A stretch of DNA of 63,999 nucleotides, filler included, from Octopus bimaculoides (lineage: Eukaryota): the NCBI RefSeq assembly GCF_001194135.2. It is 9 parts of 7 records of this genome, joined end to end, with 100 filler letters (N's around TTAATTAATTAA, not from the genome) between each part and the next. Parts side by side here need not be neighbours in the genome. Positions count along the whole stretch, not along the records: positions 10,826 to 25,185 come from NC_068988.1; 8 more parts are not named here. The stretch is one strand, 5' to 3'. Positions 5,980 through 24,149 of this stretch are shown one piece after another; the first letter of the stretch is position 1, and each line of letters begins with the position of its first letter. A program made the translations under genes and the position numbers. The notes beneath the pieces were generated by a model, which was not told the DNA's origin, searched no databases, and saw only the letters and a program-made list of their open reading frames with translations.

Positions 5980-6252
5980 AGTGGGGAGGTGTTATATGGA
6001 CTGTTGGATGTGTTATTCGTCTGTCGTTCCGTGTGTCACTGTGGTTCGTCTGAGTTCATTGCTTCATTGTTGTTGTTTTGAATGACTGTGGTAATAGAAT
6101 GTCATTGATAGATATGGCGGACATGACTCTTGTTTATTCACATCGAACTTTCGGTGAGTGCGTTCTTTGTATGTAATTGAATAATAAATGTAATAATTAA
6201 ATTGTACAACTCGTTATCTTTTCTCTGCGAGTCTCCCGAAAGGAATACAACA
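5980..6252 (+). mobile_element. Polypurine tract plus 3' LTR, probably of the Gypsy element at 4296-5050
   Basis: AGTGGGGAGG (5980-5989) is followed directly by TGTT... and the unit ends ...AACA (6252). An AATAAA lies inside. It is on the same segment as the pol fragment, across an N gap. Confidence 0.7.
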
Positions 6253-6681
6253 AGTACTCAACTGGTACTTATTTTATCGACCTCGAAAGGTTGAAAGGTT
6301 AAGTCGACCTCGGTTCATACATACATACATACATACATACATACATACATACATACATACATACATACATACGTAAGTCCGACGATGTTTTGCTGGCCGA
6401 AATTTTATAAGTCACTGCCAACAACATTCTTGTTTAAGAAGCAAGACTTTGACATAGATATAGGAGTTTTCGACTCCCATTTCTAGCAATGCTGTGCTCC
6501 TTGCACCCTTTGGTCACTTTTAGTGACGGCGAATTATTTCCTTTTTGGTTTAAATTGCTTCCGGCCACCTTTATTATTCTATAGCTATCGCATTACTACT
6601 CCGTCAAATCAGCTACTGATTTCTGTGGCCTTTTCTATAAGGATGATAGGCGAGATTTCAGATTCACCGCCCGCAATGGAG

Positions 6682-9665: not shown

Positions 9666-10585
9666 TATCTATCTATCTATCTATTTATCTATCTATCTCT
9701 TTGCCAACTGTCTATCTCTTTGCCAACTGACAAACTAGCCAGTCAGTCGTATAATAATGGTGGGGATGGCGGTGTGGTAGAGGTGGTGATGATGGAGATG
9801 GTGGTGGCGGCGGCGGCGGTGGCGGCAGTGGTGGTTGAGGTGGTGGTGACTGCGGTGGCGGCGGGGGCCGTAGTGGTTGTGGTGGTGGCGCTGGTGATGT
9901 ATCAACCCAACATCTGACTCACACTTCATGAGTCTTCTTATAAATATTTCATTCCATTATTACTTCGCACGCCGTTAGACAATTAATAAGATACATTCTC
10001 TCTCCAAAAACAACAATAACAACACCACCAACAACAGCAACAGGGAAAACAATATAATTATAATATATTAAAACGAAAAACCATAAAAACAACAATAACA
10101 ACAACGAAAACATGAAAACAATAAAAACAAAGACAAATTTCTTAATTCTATACTAAAAATTAATATTTCTTTTAAGACAGACACAAATACCTTCCTCTCC
10201 CTCTCTGTGTCATGCACAAACACACACACACAGACACACACACACACACACACACAAACACACACATACACACACACACATACACACACACGCACGAACA
10301 CGCACACACATACACACACACGTACACGCACGCACGCACGCATGCCCACAACAGTACACACGCGCACACATGCATATACAACCGCACACTTACACACACG
10401 CACTCAGACATACACACTCACACTCGCACACACACATACATACACACACACACACACATGCGCACAATAACAGTACACACGCGAAATACGCACATACACA
10501 ATCGTACACAATGAAACACACACCATCACACACACATATCCATCCACACAAATCACACAAACACATATATGCATACATACATACA

Positions 10586-10617
<32 letters not shown>

Positions 10618-10825
10618 CACAAGCACACACTCACAGCCACGTGCATATGTATATATACGTACATCGTCCGCTCTATCCTCACCACCCTCACCACCACCAC
10701 ACTATTACTATCTCCATTGACCACCNNNNNNNNNNNNNNNNNNNNNNNNNNNNNNNNNNNNNNNNNNNNTTAATTAATTAANNNNNNNNNNNNNNNNNNN
10801 NNNNNNNNNNNNNNNNNNNNNNNNN

Positions 10826-10891
<66 letters not shown>

Positions 10892-11466
10892 ACGTATATA
10901 CATATGCGTGTGTGAGTGTGTGTCTATGTATGTGTGGGGGTTATGTGTTATTGCATTTTGCAGCTTAACCGATTTACGTATGTACAATAAGTAGAATATC
11001 GATGTTATATCCTCATCGACCCGTCTGCATTATATTAAGCATTGTCCACGGTTGATCTATGAATTGACTCAAAGGACTTTTGTCTACTTCAGAAAAGAAG
11101 TTTATCTTCTAGCGTGGAGTTTAACTTAAGCTTAGGTTAAGTGTTATTGCTTTTCTTTATATACAGTGAGACTGTTGGATCACTATATTTATATATATAT
11201 ATATATATATNNNNNNNNNNNNNNNNNNNNNNNATATAATATTAGGGAATAAAGTCCAAAACTTACAGGGAAAAAATCAATTTAGCAATACTAAATCAAG
11301 TTTCCCAATATAAAATATATGTATATAATTTAGAGAAAAACCACTATTAAATAATTCAATAAAGAAGAATGTAATTCATACCCTCTATAAAATAAATATA
11401 TCATAAAAACATTATTCAAAAAATCAATAAAATACATAACAGAATAACTAGTAAATGGTATGAAAT

Positions 11467-11597
11467 GACTACGCACGTTTCGTGGCTATATTTTCAAATA
11501 GATAACTACTAAAACAAATTCGATTAATAATTTGATTAATAATAATAAAATCGATCTACAGTTAAATCTATTCAAAAATATAGTTACTCGTCAGGTC
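11467..11597 (-). ncRNA. Type I minimal hammerhead ribozyme candidate with a long stem II (left arm)
   Basis: Minus strand reads GAC-CTGACGA-G...~22-bp stem II...C-GAAAC-GTGC-GTA-GTC. Stem I is GAC/GTC and the cleavage triplet is GUA. Confidence 0.6.
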
Positions 11598-11910
11598 TAA
11601 AATAAAATTAAAAAATAATAATAAAAACAATGTACGCATTGTAACTTATACTAAATATCTAAAAAAAAAAAATACTTATATTAACAATAAATAAATAATC
11701 GAAAAACATTTAACAATATTTCTTAAAATAAAAACACAACTTATCGAAGAATTACGGTAATTCTTCAATTATATGTGTTTTTATTTTAAGAAATATTGTT
11801 AAATGTTTTTCGTTTATTTATTTATTGTTAATACAAGTATTTTTTAGATATTTAGTATAAGTTACAATGCGTACATTGATATTTTAAATTATCATTTTTA
11901 TTTTAATTTA

Positions 11911-12038
11911 GACCTGACGAGTGACTATATTTTTGAATAGATTTAGCTGTAGATCGATTCGATTATTAATTGAATTATTAATCGAATTAGTTTTAGTAGT
12001 TATCTATTTGAAAATATAGCCATGAAACGTGCGTAGTC
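11911..12038 (+). ncRNA. Type I minimal hammerhead ribozyme candidate with a long stem II (right arm)
   Basis: GAC-CTGACGA (11914-11920)-GTGACTATAT...ATATAGCCAT-GAAAC-GTGC-GTA-GTC. Predicted cleavage is after A12035. Confidence 0.55.
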
Positions 12039-12186
12039 ATTTTTTTCCATTTACTAGTTATTCTTTTACGTATTTTATTGATTTTATGAATAAGGTTTTA
12101 TGATATATTTATTTTCTAGAGGGTATGAATTACATTCTTCTTTATTGAATTATTTAATAGTGGTTTTTCTCTAAATTACACACACA

Positions 12187-12278
<92 letters not shown>

Positions 12279-12518
12279 ATCAGTATATGGTTTAACTTAT
12301 TAGACACAGTTCAACATATTCATTCATATTTATGTAATGGAGGAGGTTAGATGTTAAAATGAATTATAGTTTCAATTTTTCATGTTGCTATACAATTTGT
12401 TTCATACCAATAAACTCAGATATTCATAAGTAGAAAATCGTAATAGTCATATTTGTATCCGTCAGTAGCTGATATAAAAAATAAGACAGACGTTAGAAGT
12501 ACACAGACGTTCTCTTAC

Positions 12519-12574
12519 TTATCGTTATGGAATTATTGTATTCGTTCTTGCAGTCATGCCTATTTGAATCAAGG
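12519..12574 (-). other. Candidate small exon downstream of the GRL-like pair
   Basis: Minus strand has acceptor ACTTTTTCAG and donor-like AA|GTAAGA. The phase-1 reading is xLIQIGMTARTNTIIP*. Confidence 0.25.
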
Positions 12575-13199
12575 CTGAAAAAGTATATATTAAGTGGGTG
12601 CTGATATATGTAATATTAAAAACTGACATTCACTCAATGAAATCCAATATTTGTGTGTCTATTTAAAAATTCTTAAATGAATTGCATTACTGATTAAGCT
12701 GTATTTGTATAAAGGTTGTAAAATACCAAGTACCAAATAAGGAGATGAATGAAGTTTCAAATACTAATTTAGTTTTTACTTAACCGTCAATTACCCTTTC
12801 GACTTAAGAAATTTTTAGAAACGATGCTTGTTAATAATAGTATTAAAGAATAATTTCAATTATATTATAAATTTATAATTTAAATATTTATTGTAAATAA
12901 TAGGTCTAATATTCATAGACAAAAATATGTTATATGTCGTAATTGATTATCTAGTCACAGTATTGATATCTTTTAAAGAAAGTTAAGAAATAAATGTGAA
13001 GTATATTTGCCACTTAAATGCGGCTAAACCATAAGGGTGAATGTTACTGTTGCTTTTAGCCCCAGGAGAACATCTCCTCCAGCTGGCTATTGATACACAT
13101 CTGTGCCCTGTCGGTATTTGCANNNNNNNNNNGATACACATCTGTGCCCTGTCGGTATTTGCAAAGGGAAGTCATCCTTCCCATGTTGATCACGTGATA

Positions 13200-13244
13200 C
13201 GCACGGACTCGAGTTTCTGGGTATTTACCCTTCGTCAGCGTACG
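13200..13244 (-). ncRNA. Compact type I minimal hammerhead ribozyme candidate
   Basis: Minus strand: CGTACG CTGACGA A GGGT-AAAT-ACCC A GAAAC TCGA GTC CGTGCG. It has a 6-bp stem I, intact core, palindromic stem III loop and GUC site. Stem II is closed by a non-canonical A.A. Confidence 0.7.
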
Positions 13245-13784
13245 ACAATCACCGATCTTGGATGCGAAGGCGTCCCAATGCAAATACGTATATACTTTTT
13301 CCACTGACGAATATTCACTGATCTCCAAAAAATGAAAACAAGCAATGTTAAAGAAATAAATACTATACGAGTAATAAAGTCTAAATAAAGTGGATTACTT
13401 ACGCTACAAACTTATATAATCAGTTATAGAGGTATTAGTTAACGACAATTTCTTTTTAGTCTATGTCGAAATAGTTGTTTATAATATTGTTGAGTGTGTT
13501 TTAGTAGAAAAAATAAGGAAACAAAAAAGAAAACTGGAGAAGTTTGTTGTAATGTATGGGAGACAATAATTAATATACTTGGATATTTTACGGAAATAAT
13601 ATAGTCACACATAGATTTGCATATACAAACGCAAATAGACTAACAACACAGATATAGAAATAATACAATCAAATTATTTTCTGTCTACAACCAATACAAA
13701 TATATATATATGCGCATACATACCCATACAGCCATATATACATATATATATACACATTTATACATACATAGACACACACACATC

Positions 13785-13823
<39 letters not shown>

Positions 13824-14246
13824 NNNNNNNNNNNNNNNNNNNNNNNNNNNNNNNNNNNNNNNNNNNNNNNNNNNNNNNNNNNNNNNNNNNNNNNNNNNNN
13901 NNNNNNNNNNNNNNNNNNNNNNNNNNNNNNNNNNNNNNNNNNNNNNNNNNNNNNNNNNNNNNNNNNNNNNNNNNNNNNNNNNNNNNNNNNNNNNNNNNNN
14001 NNNNNNNNNNNNNNNNNNNNNNNNNNNNNNNNNNNNNNNNNNNNNNNNNNNNNNNNNNNNNNNNNNNNNNNNNNNNNNNNNNNNNNNNNNNNNNNNNNNN
14101 NNNNNNNNNNNNNNNNNNNNNNNNNNNNNNNNNNNNNNNNNNNNNNNNNNNNNNNNNNNNNNNNNNNNNNNNNNNNNNNNNNNNNNNNNNNNNNNNNNNN
14201 NNNNNNNNNNNNNNNNNNNNNNNNNNNNNNNNNNNNNNNNNNNNNN

Positions 14247-14282
<36 letters not shown>

Positions 14283-14374
14283 ATATATATATATTCATAT
14301 ACATATATACACATACAAATATATACACATTAAAATGTATACACATACATATACATACACCTACATATGTACAG

Positions 14375-14606
14375 TTAACCCATTAAGTCCCACTGTCCTA
14401 TAAATAGGACACTAAATGAGAGCATTAAATAATCTATATCATATTATCTCAGTTTCCTATTTATTGGACACAGAGTATTTTCCATTTCTACTTGAAGTAA
14501 AGGAGTTTTAATAATCATTTTCCCCCTTTTAACCTATTTTCAATCATCTGTAAAAAATTTAAATTAATATTCAGAAATTTAGGCACTCTAGGATTTAATG
14601 GGTTAA
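14375..14606. mobile_element. piggyBac-type MITE
   Basis: TTAA-CCCATTAAGTCC ... GGATTTAATGGG-TTAA: TIRs starting with CCC and a TTAA target duplication. Confidence 0.65.
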
Positions 14607-14793
14607 AAAGAGGTGCCTACACTCCTGTTAATATAGGTATTCATACACGTACACAGGCATAATCATATAAGTACAAGTCCAAATATTCTAAAGCACGTGT
14701 ATATACGCAGATACGACCATGCTCCAAATACTGCAGTGAAGAGGCACAATCTACATAGACACTCACATAGACGGCTACATAGACGCATCCCCC

Positions 14794-14927
<134 letters not shown>

Positions 14928-15353
14928 GTAGCTAGATATGTATATACTAGCTTAAAAGCCCCCCCCCCTCAATCGAGTGGCGTTTAAGCTATTTTATAGC
15001 TTTGAAGCAATTGACACTACATGGGAAGATCTGCGAAAAGATCTCTCACTCGTTGTGGGGGAATTTGTTGTATTTGTTTCCTCCAGAGTCACATCAAATG
15101 ATGATCATATTCGTCGCAAAAAAATAGTGTAAAAAAAACGGGTATAAACATCAAGATTGTTGTCTTAATTCAAAGAATACTTTATGGTTAAACATTCCAT
15201 TTGGTAAATAGGTAAATTACATTTTTTCAAAACGTTTGATATACCAATGAAATAACATTTTCCAATTAATCATATGTATTATCAAATCTTTTACAGACAC
15301 ACACACATATATATGTGTGTGTGCGTGTGTGTGTATGTGTGTCTGTCAGTGTG

Positions 15354-15386
<33 letters not shown>

Positions 15387-15573
15387 GTTTGTGTGTATAT
15401 ATGTATGTATATATAGGGATATATATATACAAGGACACAATATACATATATACTCAAGGACATATACACAATTTGTGTGTGTTTGTATGTGCGTGTGTGT
15501 GTGTGTCCGTGTATATATGTACGGTGATATATACACATACTTGAAATAGAGAACGGTTTTTATGCATAAATAT

Positions 15574-15604
<31 letters not shown>

Positions 15605-15643
15605 AAGAAGAAGAAGAAGAAGAAGAAGAAGAAGAAGAAGAAG

Positions 15644-15674
<31 letters not shown>

Positions 15675-15714
15675 GCAGCAAGATATGGCTAGATAAATAA
15701 ATAAACTGTTAAGA

Positions 15715-15827
15715 ACTGTAGAATGATCAGAAGAGCATTTGCTAATTAAAAATTACTTCTTCTAAAAATCTTGGTAAAGCGAAATTTTGTTTGGCGTCCC
15801 CAAGAGATGTCATACGATGAATTGTAG
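15715..15827 (-). pseudogene. Broken exon 2 of GRL-like gene A
   Basis: Same acceptor context as gene B (pyrimidine tract, TTAG|CTA). It has TGA at codon 6 (15810-15812), a 2-nt insertion and an ~140-bp deletion relative to gene B exon 2. Confidence 0.6.
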
Positions 15828-16040
15828 CTAATTCGCAAAACAAACGTCGAGAAAGAGTGAGTTAATGACGGAATTACAGAATGAGAGTCGAATGGCTATG
15901 AAAAAATTGTCATAGCGGAAGAGAAGGAGGAATTTGTTTTATAAGATATTAGGTAACATTAAAAGAAATCGAAACGAATATAATATATACTATGAAAATA
16001 TATATAAAAAAAAATGAGATTCGAGAATAATGTAACTTAC

Positions 16041-16994
16041 CGATTTATTTAAGCGAAGTCCAATCCAAACCATTCTGATCAAATACATCAAATTCAAAGA
16101 AATCACAAACATAACAGCAGAGTATTCAGTGAATAGATTTTGAAATGAACCATTTATAATCAAGTAAGTTGCAATACAACATCCAGTAATACTACTGAGT
16201 ATGATATATCCCGAAGTCAGCTGAAATGATTCATTCACTAAATTCAGTGTTTTACTCAGAGTATCATGTGAGTTACATATTTCTGTGATCTCTTTATATT
16301 TCTTAAAGAAATACGAAGTGTCTGATTGCTTTTCTTTTACGTACTTCTCAGCCTCGCTCGCTACTTTATTAAACTCATGCTGCAGTGCAGTGCCAGCTTC
16401 AATATTCATATACCAGTCAAGCGTCAGGGACGTAATTGTTATAGTATAAAATACAAAGCGTATTATTAAAAGTATTAAGACAGGACGCTCGATGGTTTTT
16501 AAATGAATTGTTGCGGAACTCCAAGTATTCGTAATGAAAAACGGGAGAATTTGATTAAAAATAGTGATAAGAATAAGAGGCAGCAACATCATTACAAAAA
16601 GAGATATAAAAGAAAACTTTAAGTTATTATTATAGAATATTTTATCGTCTTCATCAAAGGTAAGTTTGGCGAATATATCGATCATTTCTTTGTTTTTAGA
16701 TTTTCTGAAGATTCTGATCAAACAGTAGAGTGAAAGCAAAATATGTAAAAATATTGCGTAAATATGTGCCAATATTCTATCAGTCGTGCTATGATCCAAT
16801 TGTATAATATCAAAAATATATTTAATGGGGTTTACAATCAGATATACGAAGTACATGATATAAAAAGCATTGAAGCAGAGTGTACTACATTTGAGAGACT
16901 TCAACAATGATATGTTGATAATAGATATCCTTAATATATTAATTTTCTCATAAATTTGCAATATTCTATAAAATCGTGTTTCTTTTAGTTCCAT
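16041..16994 (-). CDS. Gustatory-receptor-like (7TM ion channel / 7tm_7-type) chemoreceptor, gene A, exon 1 (318 codons, TM1-TM6)
   Basis: Open frame with six hydrophobic segments. The amphipathic TM4-TM5 loop is ALQHEFNKV...CNSHDTLSKTLNLVNESF (GR-type L..F.......H..L......N..F pattern). TM6 ends W-I-G-L-R-L-N-K-S. Phase-0 donor TCG|GTAAGT. The family call is by pattern recognition, not a database search. Confidence 0.8.
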
Positions 16995-17049
16995 AATTTT
17001 TGCAATTGTGTATTTTTAACAAGTTGTGTAAAGAGTGAAACTCGCTCAC

Positions 17050-17300
17050 TTAAAACACACAAGCTGTATTTCTATGTATGATCTGTAGTTCTATAATGAG
17101 TTGCGAGTGTTGCAATGCTTCGTTTGTCACGAAAGACCTGGCAATAAAGAATGACCTGCCAACATATCTGTTATATAATGTCATCTGCATTGTTTGGACG
17201 TAGGGATTATTTCAAATCTGTTCTTATGGACTTAAGATATATATATATCAAATTAGATATAGATAACTAAGCTTCTTAAAACCCATGAATCGTAAATGCG
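17050..17300 (-). promoter_or_regulatory. Conserved upstream/promoter block of GRL-like gene A
   Basis: TTATATAA at 17171-17178 (177 bp from the ATG) and TAATCCC on the sense strand at 17203-17209. Alignable to 24150-24445 and 24845-25143. Confidence 0.6.
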
Positions 17301-17468
17301 TTATATTAAATCCAGGACGATGAATATAAATAAAAAATGTATATGTATATATATATNNNNNNNNNNNNNNNNNNNNNNNNNNNNNNNNNNNNNNNNNNNT
17401 ATATATACATACATATATATACATGTATATATACATATGTATATACACACACACACACATATATATAT

Positions 17469-17500
<32 letters not shown>

Positions 17501-17588
17501 GCATGCATATATATATACATATACATTTATATGCATACATATATATACATATATATGCATATATATACATATATATATATGCATATAT

Positions 17589-17665
<77 letters not shown>

Positions 17666-17992
17666 TATACACGCATAGACATATATATATATATACGTAT
17701 ACACACATATAGGGTTTATGCTTGACACTAATCTGCCCTACATTTGATTTTCGCAACACAATAACGAGATGAGGATATCGACGTAATATTAATATCCATT
17801 ATTTTGTATTGTATCAAACGTGGTTTCCAGATTGAGGTGTGTTGAGTAAAAGATCTATCAGTCACATAAAAGAAGCTTTCTCTTTTTCCCAATGAATATA
17901 TTAGCGTGAAATTTAACGCTAAGATAGCTTCTTACGTAGGAGCATTGTATTAGTTATATACTCTTATACAATTGTACATGCAAACATACATC

Positions 17993-18054
<62 letters not shown>

Positions 18055-18078
18055 NNNNNNNNNNNNNNNNNNNNNNNN

Positions 18079-18157
<79 letters not shown>

Positions 18158-18161
18158 CACA

Positions 18162-18830
18162 CAGGGTGTGGTCAATAAACTGTAGTCTGAATTACGGAAA
18201 AATGAAATGAACACTGACATCTGATTTTGACAGATATTTTTCTAACCAAAATTGCATAAAAGTGTATTCAAATATTACAGAGTAAAGATATTCAATAAAA
18301 TCGCCATTGTCTTCAACCACGACCTCCAGATGGTTTCGCAATCTCCTGCAACTCCTCTGGACGGTCTCCTTGTTTATATTGGTGAATGCTGCCATAACCC
18401 TTGCTTTCAGTTCATCTTTGGTGTTACATGGAGTTTTGTTGGTCTCTTGCTCAACTGCATCCCACACATAATAATCAAGGTGTTTGCAGTCTGGGGAATT
18501 AGGTGGCCAGATGTTAGGGGTGATGTGCCTGCAGAAATTATCTGACAGCCATGACTGTGTTCCCCTGCTAATGTGGCATAGTGCAGAATTCTTTTGCCAG
18601 ATATAGGGCCTTCCAGTAGCCACCCTCTTGACCCAGAGCAGCACTAATGCCTCCAGACACTTAATGTAGGCCACCGTGTTGAGTCTGAGGCCATGTAGGA
18701 AGATGAATAGGAGCATAACGTCACCATCACTAGTGATCACTCCGAAGACCATGATGTCTACTGGATGTGTCCACTGGCTGTTGTGCGGTAAAGCAAACCT
18801 CGAGAGAACAGAGCAATGGTATGAGCACAA
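18162..18830 (-). mobile_element. maT (DD37D-type) Tc1/mariner transposase 3' half with terminal repeat
   Basis: IMVFGVITSDG, WQKNSA..H, WPPNSPDCKHLDYYVW. A CAGGGTGTGGTCAATAAAC end lies at 18162. Confidence 0.85.
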
Positions 18831-18995
18831 ACCAGAAGGAGTAATGTAAAACGAACATTACAAATTAGCTGAACAGTTTTTCTACAATAAATCTAAAAGA
18901 TGAGTACTGTAAAGAGTGATAAATTAGAAGAACTGGCATTCTTTGCTGCAATATTTTAAGTAAAAAGTTTCTTATTCTTTACTTGAAGTAATAGT

Positions 18996-20215
18996 TTGTC
19001 CTATACTTTTACAAATGTAATAACTTATCCTGTACAAGCCGCCACAATTGGATTGGCCAAATATCTTCAAACAACCAACGATTGNNNNNNNNNNNNNNNN
19101 NNNNNNNNNNNNNNNNNNNNNNNNNNNNNNNNNNNNNNNNNNNNNNNNNNNNNNNNNNNNNNNNNNNNNNNNNNNNNNNNNNNNNNNNNNNNNNNNNNNN
19201 NNNNNNNNNNNNNNNNNNNNNNNNNNNNNNNNNNNNNNNNNNNNNNNNNNNNNNNNNNNNNNNNNNNNNNNNNNNNNNNNNNNNNNNNNNNNNNNNNNNN
19301 NNNNNNNNNNNNNNNNNNNNNNNNNNNNNNNNNNNNNNNNNNNNNNNNNNNNNNNNNNNNNNNNNNNNNNNNNNNNNNNNNNNNNNNNNNNNNNNNNNNN
19401 NNNNNNNNNNNNNNNNNNNNNNNNNNNNNNNNNNNNNNNNNNNNNNNNNNNNNNNNNNNNNNNNNNNNNNNNNNNNNNNNNNNNNNNNNNNNNNNNNNNN
19501 NNNNNNNNNNNNNNNNNNNNNNNNNNNNNNNNNNNNNNNNNNNNNNNNNNNNNATCAGGGGTTACGAAGTTCAGGGCTAAAAGCAGAGAGTGAAGGTTTC
19601 ATATTGGCTGCTCAAGACCAAAGCTTATTAACCCGGAACTACCAAGCCAATGTGATAAAAAATGGAGCTGACCTACAATGCCGATTCTGTAACGATGCGA
19701 TTGAAACTATAGACCACCTAATCTCAGGGTGTAGAGTCTTAGCACCTGTAGAATATAAAGCAAGACATGACAGAGTCGGCCAGTATTTACACTGGACAAT
19801 ATGTCGGCATTATAAATTCAAAACCGCTGACAAATGGTATAAACACCATCCTGAAGCTGTGACTGAGAGAGAAAATGTATCGCATCTCTGGGACTTCCCC
19901 GTACATACCGACAAATCTATAAAAACTAATAAACTGGATATTATTATAAAAGATCAGACAAAAAAGAGGTGTTTATTGATTGACATGAGTATTCCTTGCG
20001 ATCATAATATAGCGGCGAAATAATTTGACAAGAATTGCTATTAGAAATTGAAAAAATGTGGCATCTCAAGGCGACTACCGTACCAGTGATTGTAGGATCT
20101 CTAAGAAAGATTAAAAAAAGGGTACTGAAACCTATTTGAAAATGATACTAGGCCTACTATCCCTACAGAAAGTGCAAAAATTCGTGTTAACTGGAACAAC
20201 TTATGTACTGAGAAG
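18996..20215 (+). mobile_element. R4/Dong-like RLE non-LTR retrotransposon 3' fragment
   Basis: GLKAESEGFILAAQDQSL, CCHC knuckle CRFC...ETIDHLISGC, RHDRV, and restriction-like endonuclease LWDF...KLDII...LIDMSIP. Confidence 0.9.
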
Positions 20216-20410
20216 AGCATTATCGCTGTGAAAACAACATCCATTCTTGAATTTATTTATTTATTAATTTTTTTTTGCATACATATTTTACCTGTGAATT
20301 TGCGTGTGTAAACTGGAAATGCATACAATGAGCTTCTCTGCCCTAGGTGTACGGAAAACACTCGGCGAGAAATGGAAGAAAATTTGAAGAAAGAAGAAAA
20401 AAAAAACAAC

Positions 20411-20465
<55 letters not shown>

Positions 20466-20589
20466 ACAGTGAGAGAAGAAACATAGAATATTTGGTAAAC
20501 AGCAAAAAATCATGTTACATTATGCCGCTAGTGCAGAAGTAGTTAACAAAAATGGACTTGTGATTGCTCATAAATTCCAATCAAGAACA

Positions 20590-21430
20590 GTCAACGAGAA
20601 ACCCTACTCTATATGGAATTACATGGTCAGTTTCACCGTGAAACCAACAAATTCAAAGACCATAAAGCACCATGGAGGCGTCTCAACAAGGGTGACCTAA
20701 GAAAGAATACTGAAAGCTTAATCATCGCGGTCGAGGAGCATGCATTGAATACCAGCTCAATGAAAAAGAATATATACCACACAAGTGCATTGGACCTTTG
20801 CAGATTGTGTGTGAAGAGGGTCGAAAGCGTGACTCACATGGTTAGTGCTTGTGAAAGACTTACACAGAAACAGTACAAGCATAGACTCGACAAAGTAGCC
20901 CCAAACCTCCACTGGCTACTGTGCCTTAAGTATGGCTATGAGGTCGCTGATGCTTGGTGCCAACATACACCGGGAAAGGTAACGGACGAAAATGGGAAAG
21001 CAAAAATCTCCTGGGACTTTGATTTCCAGACAAAGTATTAGAGTATAGAAGGCCAGATATAGTAACCTTTAGGAGGAAAAACAAAAGCGCCTAATAATCG
21101 ACGAAACAGTGTCAGGGGGTCAAAACATCATTATGAAAGAAAGAGAAAAAGTTGATAAATATGGAGACCTGAAAATTGAGATCGCTAAGATGTGGCAGCT
21201 ACGAGAGTCGAACATAAAGATTATCCCTATTGTCATCGGAGCATTGGGTTCAATACCACCCGATCTGAAAAAAACATCTGAAAACTTTAGAAATACCCTA
21301 CAATCTAGGTGTATTGCAAAAGTCGGCATTACTTGGAATTACACGCATACTGCGCAAAGTACTCTCTGTCTGAGGTCCTTGATGTGACATAACAAACATT
21401 ACAAACCCCCGGTAGACAAAATATCTTCAA
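20590..21430 (+). mobile_element. Second R4/Dong-like RLE LINE 3' fragment
   Basis: GDLRKNTESLIIAVEEHAL, CRLC...ESVTHMVSAC, WDFDFQT, KYGDLKIEIAKMW, IPIVIGALG. Preceded by (AAT)n at 20412-20462. Confidence 0.85.
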
Positions 21431-21479
21431 TGAACAACCTCACAATACTGTGCAACGTCTATAAAAATAATAATAATGA

Positions 21480-22060
21480 GGAAGATTTGAAGGATGCTAG
21501 GGAACTGAAATGTCAAATGGGAAAACAATGAGAGCGGTTGAGAAACAGCAGAGGTATAAGTGCTTGGGAATACTGGGAGCATACGAGATAATAAATGAAG
21601 AAACTATACAAATTACCAGCAGGGAATACACAAAGAGAGGCAAGAAACTATTGCAATCAAAACTGAATTCCAAAAATCTTATGGAAGCAATAAATTCAAG
21701 AACAGTTTACCGTAATCAGATATAGAGTTGGAATTATAGACTGGATCAGAAACGATATAAAGAAATTTGACAGAAAAATTAGGAAGCTGTTGACGATGTA
21801 TGGAGCCCATCATCCGAAGAGGCTTAAATAGCAGTAGAAGAATGTGTACCGATGGAAAGGAAATGTTTAGTAAAGTATTTATGGAACACCACAGACAAAC
21901 TACGAAAGACAGTTAATAAAGAACAGGTGATGGGAGTGCGTAATAGGAGAAAAGGGCAAGAAGGGGATACATGGGAACACGTAAGACTTTGCTGTTTGTC
22001 ATTTCAGTGTCAATGAAGAAAGTACCAGTTGAATACTGGAGTTGAAGCAAGCGACTTACC
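21480..22060 (+). mobile_element. R4/Dong-like LINE internal fragment (post-RT region)
   Basis: YKCLGILG...REYTKRGKKLLQSKLNSKNLMEAINS...FDRKIRKLLTMYGAHHPK. Followed by (TTA)n at 22087-22150. Confidence 0.75.
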
Positions 22061-22086
22061 CTTCTGCCAAAATTTAGGCCTTGAGA

Positions 22087-22152
<66 letters not shown>

Positions 22153-22697
22153 AAGTCTTATCTTTCATCACGGGCTTTCACTGCACTACCGAGCGCAGCT
22201 CTGTGTGCCTTGGGTATGTGCTGTGGTTTCTTGTGGTGATCTTATTTTCTCTGTATTAAAAACGTTTTACGTAGGATTATTGTTATTTTGCAGTTGTTTA
22301 TGTTGTTTTTTTAATTAAAAGAATAAGGGGGAAGAGAAAGTTGAAAAAGAAGATGGAAAGGAGGAAAGAAAGAAAGAAAGAAAGAAGGAAGAACAGAAAC
22401 GAACACTATTAGGAAATGCAGAAATATCAGAAAAGCATTATCAAATTAAAAATGATGTCATCCAAGAGAAGGAGGGGAAGGAGAAGAAGAAGAAGAAGAA
22501 GAAGAAGAAGAAGAAGAAGNNNNNNNNNNAAGAAGAAGAAGAAGAAGAAGAAGAAGAAGAAGAAGAAGAAGAAAATTACTAGGAAATGCAAAATGATCCA
22601 AAACGCATTTCGTAAATTAAAAATGACGTCTTCCAAAAATTCTGTTTAACACATCAATCAATGTTATTCAAGTTATTAGAATGTTGTTCAGTGTGTC

Positions 22698-22838
22698 CTA
22701 AAAATAAAGCCTTTGCTGGAACGAGACAATAATGCATCCATGTGAATAGTTTTCCAGCCCCTCAATCAAGCCTTCTGCATTTCTTGGATAAGCGAGATTT
22801 TGTGTGGCGTCCCTAAGACGTTTTACGATGAATGGTAG
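22698..22838 (-). CDS. GRL-like gene B, predicted exon 2 (46 codons to a TAG; no recognisable intact TM7 motif)
   Basis: Pyrimidine-rich acceptor CTTAG|CTA, in phase with exon 1. Reads LPFIVKRLRDATQNLAYPRNAEGLIEGLENYSHGCIIVSFQQRLYF*. Confidence 0.55.
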   Translation of the reverse strand, partial: LPFIVKRLRDATQNLAYPRNAEGLIEGLENYSHGCIIVSFQQRLYF

Positions 22839-23144
22839 CTAAGTCCGACGACCAAGAGAGAGAAAGTGTGAATGAAGGAATGATGGAATAAGAGAATGAG
22901 TAGAATGCCTGTAGGGATAATAGCTATACTCTGGTAGAGATGGAAGATTTTCATCCATTATTTCAGATCTGTCTGAGGTTCACATTTGGGAAACAAAAGA
23001 TGAAAGACGGATGTCGGAAGATAAGATATCACATTAGTTTAAAACACCAATGGAATTGGGATAACATATTCGACATATTTTATGATGTAATATGTCAAAT
23101 AAAATTAAAATAAAACTACGATTATATATAATTATATAGCTTAC

Positions 23145-24095
23145 CGATTCATTTAAACGAACTCCAATCCACAGCATTCTGATCAAAAGTAACATGTTCC
23201 ACGAAGCCAGAAACATAACGAAAACGTAATCAGAGAGTATAATGTTTAATGAGTCATTTATAATCATATAAGTAGCAACACAACATGCAGCAATACTAAT
23301 GAACGCGATCAATCCCAAAGACAATTGAAATGACTCATTTACTAAATTCAGTGTTTTACTCAGAGTATCATGTAAGTTACATATTTCGGGAATCTCTTTA
23401 TATTTCTTAAAGAAATACGAAGTATTAGATTGCTTTTCTTTTACGTATTTCTCAGCTTCGCTCGCTACTTTATTAAACTCATACTGCAGTGCAGCCCCAA
23501 TTGCTGTATTGATATACCAATCAAATAGCATGCCCGTGAGTGATATACAATCAAATACAACGTGAGTTAATGCAATAATTAAGCCATGATTTTTGCTTGT
23601 TTCTAAATGAATTGTTGAGGAAACCAAATCAGAGCTCAGGAAAAACGGGAGAACGTAGTTCATAATAGTGAGTAAAATAGGCGGCAGCAATATCACTATA
23701 GAAAGTGATATAAAAGAAAATATTAAGTTATTGTTATAGAATTTTTCATCGTCTTCTTCAATTGTAAGTTCGGTAAATGCTTCGAGGATTTCTTTCTCTT
23801 TAGATTTTCTGAAGAATTTGATCAGACAGTAAAGTGAAAGCAAACACTGAAGAAACAGTGCATAAATATATACGAATATTCTATCAGTTTCGCTATGATA
23901 CAATTCTATTATATCATACGTATATATAATGGGGTTCATTATCAGATATACCGAATACAGGATATAAAAGGCAGAGATACAGATAGTGTTACAGTTGAGA
24001 GATTTCAGTTTTACGCTGATAAGTGATATTTTAGAAATATTAATTTTCCCATAAAATTGTAACATTTTATAGAATCGTGTTTCTTTTAGTTCCAT
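23145..24095 (-). CDS. Gustatory-receptor-like (7TM ion channel / 7tm_7-type) chemoreceptor, gene B, exon 1 (317 codons, TM1-TM6)
   Basis: Colinear paralogue of 16041-16994, with the same MELKETRFY start and a near-identical TM4-TM5 loop. Phase-0 donor TCG|GTAAGC at the same codon. Confidence 0.8.
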
Positions 24096-24149
24096 AATTT
24101 TGTAATTTGCTATTACTCACAAGTTACTTCTATATAACACGTTGAACTA

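What the first reader, a model, noticed from the sequence alone, without database searches (positions are those of the whole stretch)
15715..23144. Intact TM1-TM6 first exons but broken private TM7 exons: possible variable-exon/shared-exon receptor locus, or 6-TM receptors
Seen: no stop or frameshift in 1905 bp of exon 1 (both genes), with donors and promoters intact, although the paralogues are well diverged. Gene A exon 2 has a stop at codon 6, a 2-nt insertion and an ~140-bp deletion. Gene B exon 2 stops after 46 codons, before any TYxxxxxQF-type TM7 motif; eroded TM7-like sequence may follow at ~22640-22700. Established: Drosophila Gr28b and Gr39a splice alternative long first exons onto shared C-terminal exons, and TM7 lines the pore. 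Inference: the first exons may stay under selection because they splice to a common downstream TM7 exon, or they make pore-less 6-TM modulatory subunits.
Basis: partly seen in the sequence, partly recalled or inferred. Interest (0 to 1): 0.75.

Follow-up and report, generated by a model that had tools for sequence, protein, structure and literature searches.

The report
Octopus taste-receptor-like alternative first exons
The window holds two intact, tandem "variable" first exons of an octopus gustatory-receptor-like ion channel gene. In related octopus loci, exons of this kind are spliced to one distant shared set of three small exons that supply the last membrane helix.

Summary
The piece is octopod DNA. 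On the minus strand lie two paralogous long exons: A at 16994-16041 and B at 24095-23145. They are 63% identical in protein, have no stop or frameshift, and both end in a phase-0 TCG|GTAAG donor. Their closest annotated relative is Octopus sinensis LOC118764608. There, five intact first exons on one strand are followed by a single set of three small phase-0 exons (69, 90 and 57 nt) that encode the loop and TM7 (TYILVVIQT). RefSeq isoforms X1 and X3 join two different first exons to those same exons. The neighbouring locus LOC118764606 has two first exons and one constant set. The O. vulgaris array closest to A and B holds at least 11 first-exon copies in 73.7 kb, with no TM7 exon at all. Profile comparison, Pfam on a paralogue and a confident AlphaFold model place the family in the insect OR/GR (7tm_7, GR-like) superfamily.

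They have no similarity to the real constant exons, no TM7 motif and no conserved acceptor, and they are no better conserved than the surrounding intron.

The shared-exon idea is therefore supported by comparison. This is the Drosophila Gr39a/Gr28b architecture, found in a cephalopod.

The parts
23145..24095 (-). Variable first exon B: coding part, 317 codons from ATG at 24095 to TCG at 23145. Encodes TM1-TM6 of a GR-like channel subunit.
   Evidence: Open frame. 42% identical to the first exon of O. sinensis XP_036361421.1. 69% identical to O. vulgaris array copies. Weak co-linear Pfam 7tm_7 match, E 0.25.
23140..23144 (-). Phase-0 splice donor GTAAG of exon B.
   Evidence: Same position and phase as the donors of all O. 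sinensis and O. vulgaris first exons.
24096..24412 (-). 5' flank of exon B. Homologous to the flank of A and of O. vulgaris copies, with a TATA-like ACATTATATAA about 170 bp before the ATG. Candidate own promoter and 5' UTR.
   Evidence: Its conservation is about the neutral level, so function is inferred.
16041..16994 (-). Variable first exon A: coding part, 318 codons.
   Evidence: Open frame. 63% identical in protein to B, dN/dS 0.61 with bootstrap interval 0.43-0.90. 41% identical to O. sinensis P0002.
16036..16040 (-). Phase-0 splice donor GTAAG of exon A.
16995..17312 (-). 5' flank of exon A, 77% identical to that of B. Candidate own promoter.
22701..22838 (-). Judged to be intron sequence duplicated together with the exon, not an exon.
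15715..15827 (-). Judged to be co-duplicated intron.
17313..23139 (-). Sequence between donor B and the flank of A. Under the model it is part of a long intron running from donor B over exon A. It is filled with microsatellites and transposable-element fragments and has four assembly gaps.
10826..16035 (-). 5.2 kb downstream of donor A. It holds no constant (TM7) exon, so those exons must lie beyond the edge of the piece.
   Evidence: tblastn and the C-terminal HMM both found nothing.

Best explanation
A and B are two members of a tandem array of alternative long first exons of one octopus gustatory-receptor-like (GRL, 7tm_7 superfamily) locus.

Proposed mechanism:
1. Each variable exon has its own 5' flank, which is probably its own promoter.
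2. Each variable exon encodes the N-terminus and TM1-TM6, the part that differs between isoforms and would form the ligand pocket.
3. Each ends in the same phase-0 donor.
4. Transcription starting at one variable exon runs through the downstream variable exons, which have no acceptor and are removed as intron.
5. The donor is then joined to a single shared set of three small phase-0 exons, kilobases to tens of kilobases away.
6. Those shared exons encode the end of the TM6 extension, the cytoplasmic anchor helix (S7a) and the pore-lining TM7 (TYxxxxxQ motif).

Every isoform would then have a different sensing half and the same pore and assembly half.

Shown: the exon anatomy in the window; the one-constant-set anatomy and the two annotated isoforms in O. 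sinensis; the absence of private TM7 exons in all sampled arrays; and the family's fold.

Inferred: that A and B are themselves transcribed and spliced this way, that choice is made by the promoter, and the channel function.
For: - Window anatomy: two open paralogous exons with identical phase-0 donors and homologous 5' flanks.
- The frames are kept against neutral expectation, with dN/dS 0.61, interval 0.43-0.90.
- O. sinensis locus L001 has first exons at 1457, 10001, 16398, 27576 and 42321, plus a decayed one at 6109. It has one constant set, at 46673-46741, 47649-47738 and 49533-49589, all with AG/GT sites in phase 0.
- XP_036361421.1 (isoform X1) is exactly exon 10001-10954 plus the constant set. 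XP_036361423.1 (isoform X3) ends exactly as exon 27576-28511 plus the same constant set.
- LOC118764606 has two first exons and one constant set.
- LOC118764607 in O. sinensis and LOC106880719 in O. bimaculoides also have numbered isoforms with this C-terminus.
- O. vulgaris loci L007 and L009 hold at least 11 first-exon copies on one strand, at least six of them intact, and no constant exon in 73.7 kb.
- An HMM of 21 GRL C-termini, run over six-frame translations of all these loci and the window, finds only the 3+3 constant exons (E 2.6e-13 to 1e-3). The next best hit has E 0.77.
- Family placement: an octopus-only profile matches proteins that pass Pfam 7tm_7. hhalign gives probability 98.6%, E 7.9e-16, over 202 columns. 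The paralogue P0018 passes 7tm_7 at 31.7 bits against a cut-off of 26.6.
- The AlphaFold model of P0002 has pLDDT 90.4. Its 24 best PDB matches are all insect Orco, OR or GR structures, with TM-scores 0.51-0.66.
Against: - No constant exon lies in the piece, so the link between A or B and a TM7 exon is by analogy only.
- No protein containing A or B is annotated anywhere in the 5.8-billion-protein collection.
- No RNA or read evidence could be obtained.
- Protein-level constraint is weak. dN/dS between B and the O. vulgaris copies is 0.7-0.8, with intervals that include 1.
- Several copies in the O. vulgaris array are truncated or carry stops, so some array members are dead.
- In no species did I reach the constant exons of the particular A/B-type array.
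- The O. sinensis isoforms are RefSeq model proteins. That they rest on RNA-seq is my inference from how such isoforms are called, not something I checked.
- The second AlphaFold alignment included true 7tm_7 proteins, which helps the model towards that fold.
Confidence: 0.75

Rival explanations
1. Dead or dying array members. A and B were variable exons of such a locus but are no longer used, and their open frames are a remnant.
For: dN/dS is high: 0.61 between A and B, and 0.7-0.8 against O. vulgaris copies, with intervals touching 1. Arrays of this kind contain many truncated or stopped copies. Neither exon appears in any annotated protein.
Against: Two copies 21.8% apart both keep about 317 open codons, with a single 1-codon indel between them and intact consensus donors. 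In simulation, about 0.1-0.4% of copies stay open per lineage. Second codon positions differ least: 0.164 against 0.249 and 0.240.
Confidence: 0.12
2. Stand-alone 6-TM products. Each first exon is translated with a short read-through tail (A +16 residues, B +36) and acts without TM7, for example as a modulatory subunit.
For: The open frames run on into the intron for a few codons. Nothing in the window excludes polyadenylation within the intron.
Against: The donor and its phase are conserved in every copy in three species. The read-through tails differ in length and sequence between A and B. In the model, residues 319-389 from the constant exons supply the end of TM6, the S7a helix and TM7. 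Annotated products in O. sinensis are spliced to TM7.
Confidence: 0.05
3. Ordinary separate genes whose private TM7 exons are broken (recent pseudogenes) or hidden in assembly gaps.
For: Sequence blocks downstream of both exons are homologous and carry stops and indels. Four gaps lie between B and A.
Against: The blocks do not resemble the real constant exons. They have no TM7 motif and no HMM hit. They lose the AG acceptor in O. vulgaris and are no better conserved than the about 585 bp around them. No sampled first exon in three other loci has a private TM7 exon. Three of the four gaps are 10-43 N inside microsatellites, whereas a constant set spans about 3 kb in O. sinensis.
Confidence: 0.05

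Closest known systems
Drosophila Gr39a, and likewise Gr28b and Gr23a: gustatory receptor loci with alternative large 5' exons
   Same: Several large 5' exons in tandem, each encoding TM1-TM6, are alternatively joined to three small conserved 3' exons that carry TM7 (PMC2204066). The octopus loci have the same 1 + 3 exon layout, and all three introns are phase 0. Exon gain, loss and pseudogenisation within the array also match.
   Different: The octopus is a mollusc and its proteins share only about 10-14% identity with insect receptors. The arrays are larger: 5-6 first exons in O. sinensis LOC118764608 and at least 11 copies in the O. vulgaris array, against 4-5 in Gr39a. The introns are far longer, up to 44 kb from donor to constant exon, and full of transposable elements. 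The TM7 motif ends in QT rather than QF.
Animal gustatory-receptor-like (GRL) proteins / 7TM ion channels (Pfam 7tm_7, PF08395)
   Same: Seven-helix fold matching Orco, OR and GR structures. [quoted passage not shown] Profile-profile probability is 98.6%.
   Different: The window exons and P0002 do not reach Pfam's own threshold. Only the paralogue P0018 does. This is a diverged, octopod-expanded branch.
Vertebrate clustered protocadherins and UGT1A (variable first exons with constant exons)
   Same: A tandem array of long variable first exons, each with its own upstream region, feeds one constant set of three small exons downstream. Downstream variable exons are removed as intron.
   Different: The protein family is unrelated. 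Promoter choice, and any rule of one isoform per cell, are untested here. This is an analogy of mechanism, not membership.

Membership tests
GR / GR-like 7TM ion channel superfamily (Pfam 7tm_7) | Significant sequence-profile similarity to recognised members. | tested here: met
   A profile built only from octopus-cluster sequences finds proteins that pass Pfam 7tm_7. hhalign of A5 against A6 gives probability 98.6%, E 7.9e-16, with 202 co-linear columns, of which about 140 are encoded by the variable exon. Direct Pfam scores of the window exons and of P0002 are below threshold. The paralogue P0018 scores 31.7 bits against a cut-off of 26.6.
GR / GR-like 7TM ion channel superfamily (Pfam 7tm_7) | Seven-helix fold of Orco, OR and GR subunits. 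| tested here: met
   The AlphaFold model of P0002 has pLDDT 90.4 and pTM 0.89. Its top 24 PDB matches are all Orco, OR or GR, with TM-scores 0.51-0.66; the next match has TM-score 0.21. Caveats: the alignment included 7tm_7 proteins, and the protein modelled is the O. sinensis relative, not the window product.
GR / GR-like 7TM ion channel superfamily (Pfam 7tm_7) | TM7 motif TYhhhhhQF. | tested here: inconclusive
   The motif is present as TYILVVIQT in the constant exons of the relatives. It is absent from the window piece, because TM7 is not encoded there.
GR / GR-like 7TM ion channel superfamily (Pfam 7tm_7) | [quoted passage not shown] | tested here: inconclusive
   L001 has three phase-0 introns in the C-terminal 71 codons, and L010 has the same exon layout. 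The window donors share the first of these positions. Whether these positions equal the canonical GRL positions was not checked against a reference gene.
Gr39a/Gr28b-type alternatively spliced receptor locus | Tandem array, on one strand, of long 5' exons encoding TM1-TM6 that end in the same-phase donor. | tested here: met
   Window: A and B. L001: five intact. L007 and L009: at least 11 copies.
Gr39a/Gr28b-type alternatively spliced receptor locus | A single shared set of short 3' exons carrying TM7, with no private TM7 exon per 5' exon. | tested here: inconclusive
   Met in L001 and L010. In the window and in the O. vulgaris array no private TM7 exon exists, but the shared set was not reached either.
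Gr39a/Gr28b-type alternatively spliced receptor locus | mRNAs that join different 5' exons to the same 3' exons. | not testable with these tools
   Two RefSeq model isoforms of O. sinensis LOC118764608 do so. No annotated protein contains A or B.
Gr39a/Gr28b-type alternatively spliced receptor locus | Each 5' exon has its own promoter. | tested here: inconclusive
   A homologous 5' flank of about 320 bp with a TATA-like element travels with each A/B-type exon. Its conservation is near the neutral level, and no transcription-start data were available.

The most novel reading that the evidence does not exclude
The A/B-type array is a protocadherin-scale single transcription unit. In O. vulgaris it holds at least 11 variable exons over more than 73 kb with no constant exon yet in reach. 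Promoter choice would give each octopus chemosensory cell one of many GR-like isoforms that share one pore and assembly module. This would be an independently evolved cephalopod route to receptor diversity and perhaps to one-receptor-per-cell expression, alongside the known nicotinic-receptor-like chemotactile receptors.
Probability: 0.2. Interest if true: 0.75.

Novelty: new member of a known kind. Interest (0 to 1): 0.45.

Why it matters
GR-like channels are ancient in animals, but they have hardly been studied outside arthropods and nematodes. The taste-by-touch receptors described in octopus so far belong to an unrelated, nicotinic-receptor-like family.

If octopus GR-like genes are built as large arrays of alternative sensing halves on one shared pore and anchor module, three things follow:
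- Many of these receptors are missed or mis-modelled by gene finders. A and B are in no annotated protein, and an O. vulgaris model in the array looks chimeric.
- The Gr39a/Gr28b layout is either very old or has arisen repeatedly.
- The arrays offer a natural system for asking how ligand-binding halves can be swapped on a constant pore.

For genome annotation, the practical lesson is that an apparently TM7-less GR exon should trigger a search for distant constant exons, not a pseudogene call.

Tried and rejected
- Pfam on the window exons and on P0002 gave nothing above threshold.
- A 3-sequence octopus profile against PDB sequences gave nothing.
- The first AlphaFold run, with a 6-sequence alignment, was unusable at pLDDT 48 and was not searched.
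- A search with the 71-residue constant region returned only one protein. Its gene could not be looked up, because only the longest isoform is on record.
- A homologue search with exon A found no annotated protein that contains it.
- tblastn, a motif scan and an HMM scan for constant or TM7 exons in the piece were all negative.
- Extending the O. vulgaris array by 5.3 kb (L009) found one more first exon, not the constant set.
- Literature searches for a description of cephalopod or mollusc GR-like alternative first exons found none in the held library. Robertson 2015 (Chem Senses), the main survey of non-insect GRLs, is not held there.
- I considered that the 'exon 2' blocks were relics of ancient private exons and rejected it.
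- I also considered that the conserved blocks were special regulatory elements. I rejected that because the whole first 585 bp or so of intron is equally conserved.


Full report
**What is in the window**

The piece (10826-25185) is AT-rich, microsatellite-laden animal DNA. On the minus strand are two long open reading frames. Read to their splice donors, they are:
- exon A, 16994-16041 (954 nt, 318 codons);
- exon B, 24095-23145 (951 nt, 317 codons).

Both start MELKETRFY... Both end ...W-I-G-x-R-L-N-x-S with TCG followed by GTAAGT (A) or GTAAGC (B).

A and B are homologous from about 320 bp upstream of the ATG, through the exon, and in patches of the downstream sequence. They are 76% identical over 1301 aligned bases.

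**Is the intactness more than chance?**

- The exons differ at 21.8% of aligned nucleotides. By codon position the differences are 0.249, 0.164 and 0.240, and protein identity is 63%.
- I mutated exon A with the local non-coding base composition. Only 0.45% of copies stayed free of stops at 10% substitution per lineage, 0.14% at 12.5%, and about 0.01% at 15%. This ignores indels, which are frequent in the flanks.
- Nei-Gojobori dN/dS for A against B is 0.61, with a bootstrap interval of 0.43-0.90.

The frames are therefore maintained, but protein-level constraint is weak. That is usual for young chemoreceptor paralogues.

**The assembly gaps**

Gaps 17357-17399, 18055-18078 and 22520-22529 are flanked on both sides by the same microsatellite (TA, AC and CTT respectively). 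Gap 19085-19553 lies between unique sequence and a retrotransposon-like reading frame.

**Relatives**

Exon B finds only four proteins among 5.8 billion, all from octopus or from unnamed assemblies. The informative one is P0002, which is XP_036361421.1, 'LOC118764608 isoform X1' of Octopus sinensis. It has 389 residues and is 42% identical to B across the whole first exon. It continues with 71 further residues, VHSITQ...GSFITYILVVIQTKPL, which include a TYxxxxxQ motif.

Its gene spans 39.6 kb. In that locus (L001), tblastn finds:
- first-exon homologues on the same strand at 1457-2413, 10001-10954, 16398-17354, 27576-28511 and 42321-43271, all open and all ending TCG|GTAAGT or TCA|GTGAGT;
- a decayed copy at 6109-6486;
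- exactly one set of C-terminal exons.

The constant exons are 46673-46741 (69 nt), 47649-47738 (90 nt) and 49533-49589 (54 nt plus stop). Each has AG and GT boundaries in phase 0. Joining exon 10001-10954 to them reproduces P0002 exactly.

A second RefSeq product, XP_036361423.1 'isoform X3' (P0012), is exactly the tail of a different first exon (27576-28511) joined to the same three exons. The distance from donor to constant exon ranges from 3.4 to 44 kb.

**The pattern is general in octopus**

- O. sinensis LOC118764606 (P0018, locus L010) has its first exon at 10001-11014 and a skipped paralogous first exon at 23267-24277. It has one constant set at 27093-27164, 30160-30258 and 37704-37781.
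- LOC118764607 (P0008, isoform X3) and O. bimaculoides LOC106880719 (P0005, isoform X3) carry a 90-92% identical constant region and are also annotated with several isoforms.
- The copies closest to A and B (up to 69% protein identity to B) lie in an O. vulgaris array (L007 plus L009, 73.7 kb). It holds at least 11 first-exon copies on one strand. At least six are intact with the TCG|GTAAGT donor, and the others are truncated or carry stops. It contains no constant exon at all.
- I built an HMM from 21 GR-like C-termini and ran it over the six-frame translations of the window piece and of L001, L007, L009 and L010. It finds only the six constant exons of L001 and L010 (E from 2.6e-13 to 1e-3). 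The next best hit has E 0.77.

In the DNA sampled there are therefore about 16 intact first exons and only two constant sets. No private TM7 exon exists, not even a degenerate one detectable at this sensitivity.

The letters are as described:
- In A, the block from 15827 reads L-Q-F-I-V-stop. A has two extra bases and lacks about 140 bp that B has.
- In B, 22838-22701 is 46 codons, then TAG.

But these blocks are not exons:
- The 46-residue peptide has no significant similarity to the true constant region. Its Smith-Waterman score is 22, against a shuffle mean of 19.5 with sd 3.7, and 23% of shuffles score as high.
- No [TS]Yx5Q motif occurs on the minus strand of the piece.
- The 'acceptor' TTAG is TTTG in the O. 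vulgaris copies, and those copies stop after 26 codons.
- The block is not specially conserved. The whole first 585 bp or so downstream of donor B is 70-76% identical to the O. vulgaris copies.

These blocks are intron that was duplicated along with the exon. I could not reproduce the 'eroded TM7-like sequence' at 22640-22700. That stretch is one copy of an 86-bp segment repeated on both sides of the CTT microsatellite.

**What family is it?**

- Pfam does not recognise the window exons (7tm_7 E 0.25 for B) or P0002.
- A profile built only from P0002, B and P0005, searched against 1.84 billion representatives, found 47 proteins at E of 1e-3 or better. Beyond the octopus sequences, these include proteins that pass Pfam 7tm_7 and often Trehalose_recp.
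- The octopus paralogue P0018 itself passes 7tm_7 at 31.7 bits against a cut-off of 26.6.
- Another relative is named 'Gustatory receptor' in UniRef.
- hhalign of an octopus-only alignment against four 7tm_7-passing proteins gives probability 98.6% and E 7.9e-16. It covers 202 co-linear columns (P0002 residues 180-388). This span includes about 140 residues encoded by the variable exon.
- With a 28-sequence alignment, AlphaFold2 models P0002 at pLDDT 90.4 and pTM 0.89. The 24 best PDB matches are all insect Orco, OR or GR structures with TM-scores of 0.51-0.66. The next match has TM-score 0.21.

One caveat: that alignment contained genuine 7tm_7 sequences. In the model, the variable exon (residues 1-318) supplies six long helices. 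The constant exons supply the end of helix 288-327, helix 336-351 and the last helix 366-385. From what is known of Orco (my knowledge), these correspond to the S7a anchor helix and the S7b pore helix.

**Mechanism**

The best reading is a Gr39a/Gr28b-type locus. Each long first exon has its own 5' flank; a TATA-like ACATTATATAA lies about 170 bp before the ATG in the A/B-type copies. Each is spliced from a common-phase donor to one distant set of three small exons carrying TM7, and the intervening variable exons are removed as intron. [quoted passage not shown] A TM7 motif and conserved 3' introns are the accepted hallmarks of animal GR-like genes (PMC7746228).

What is shown and what is inferred:
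- Shown: the anatomy, and the two O. sinensis isoform models.
- Inferred: that A and B are used this way.

The points against are these. The constant exons are not in the piece; 5.2 kb downstream of A is empty. No annotated protein contains A or B. No reads could be laid.

**Rivals**

- A and B are unused relics (confidence about 0.12). Weak constraint and many dead copies in such arrays favour this. Two open frames at 22% divergence argue against it.
- Stand-alone 6-TM products (about 0.05).
- Private TM7 exons that are broken or hidden in gaps (about 0.05). argue against this.

**Novelty**

The architecture is known in insects. It is implicit in RefSeq's octopus isoform models. I found no paper in the held library that describes it for cephalopods or molluscs, although the main survey of non-insect GRLs (Robertson 2015) is not held there. 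I rate this a new member of a known kind and of moderate interest. The array size in O. vulgaris and the fact that gene finders miss these exons are the noteworthy points.

Noticed in passing
window 24852-25119 (minus strand): A third copy of the 5' flank, 93% identical to the flank of exon B. It starts after a microsatellite just as B's flank does. The similarity stops about 45 bp before where the ATG would be, and no exon follows. This is a promoter-only partial duplication.
   Followed up: partly
window 19556-20020 (+), 20613-21041 (+), 21109-21387 (+), 18192-18830 (-): Transposable-element fragments fill the interval between B and A. Two frames give weak zf-RVT (reverse-transcriptase zinc-binding) matches, E 8.6e-4 and 8.5e-3. 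A 212-codon frame on the minus strand has no Pfam hit, but by eye it resembles the C-terminal part of a Tc1/mariner transposase (my knowledge, not tested).
   Followed up: partly
window 22554-22636 and 22382-22465: An 86-bp segment is repeated (78% identical) on both sides of the CTT microsatellite that contains the 10-N gap. A related segment follows exon A at 15705-15769. The microsatellite seems to have grown inside, or duplicated, this segment.
   Followed up: no
window 13123-13132: The 10-N gap is flanked by the same 31 bases on both sides (gatacacatctgtgccctgtcggtatttgca). This looks like an unmerged overlap from assembly rather than missing sequence.
   Followed up: no
L007 10001-58380 (O. 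vulgaris OX597821.1): The annotated 'hypothetical protein' P0004 spans 48 kb of the array. It appears to be a chimeric model: an unrelated N-terminal part, a middle piece of one variable exon and the first 45 residues of another.
   Followed up: partly
L010 23267-24277 (O. sinensis CM016866.1): LOC118764606 is annotated with a single product. It has a second intact-looking first-exon paralogue (43% identical) between its first exon and its constant exons, so it probably also makes two isoforms.
   Followed up: partly
L002-L006, L008 (Logan contigs of SRR11869384-SRR11869394): Short contigs from an unnamed source carry related first exons. Their called proteins read through the GTAAGT donor into the intron, as do many other proteins found. 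Automatic ORF calling therefore reports these exons as TM7-less proteins.
   Followed up: no
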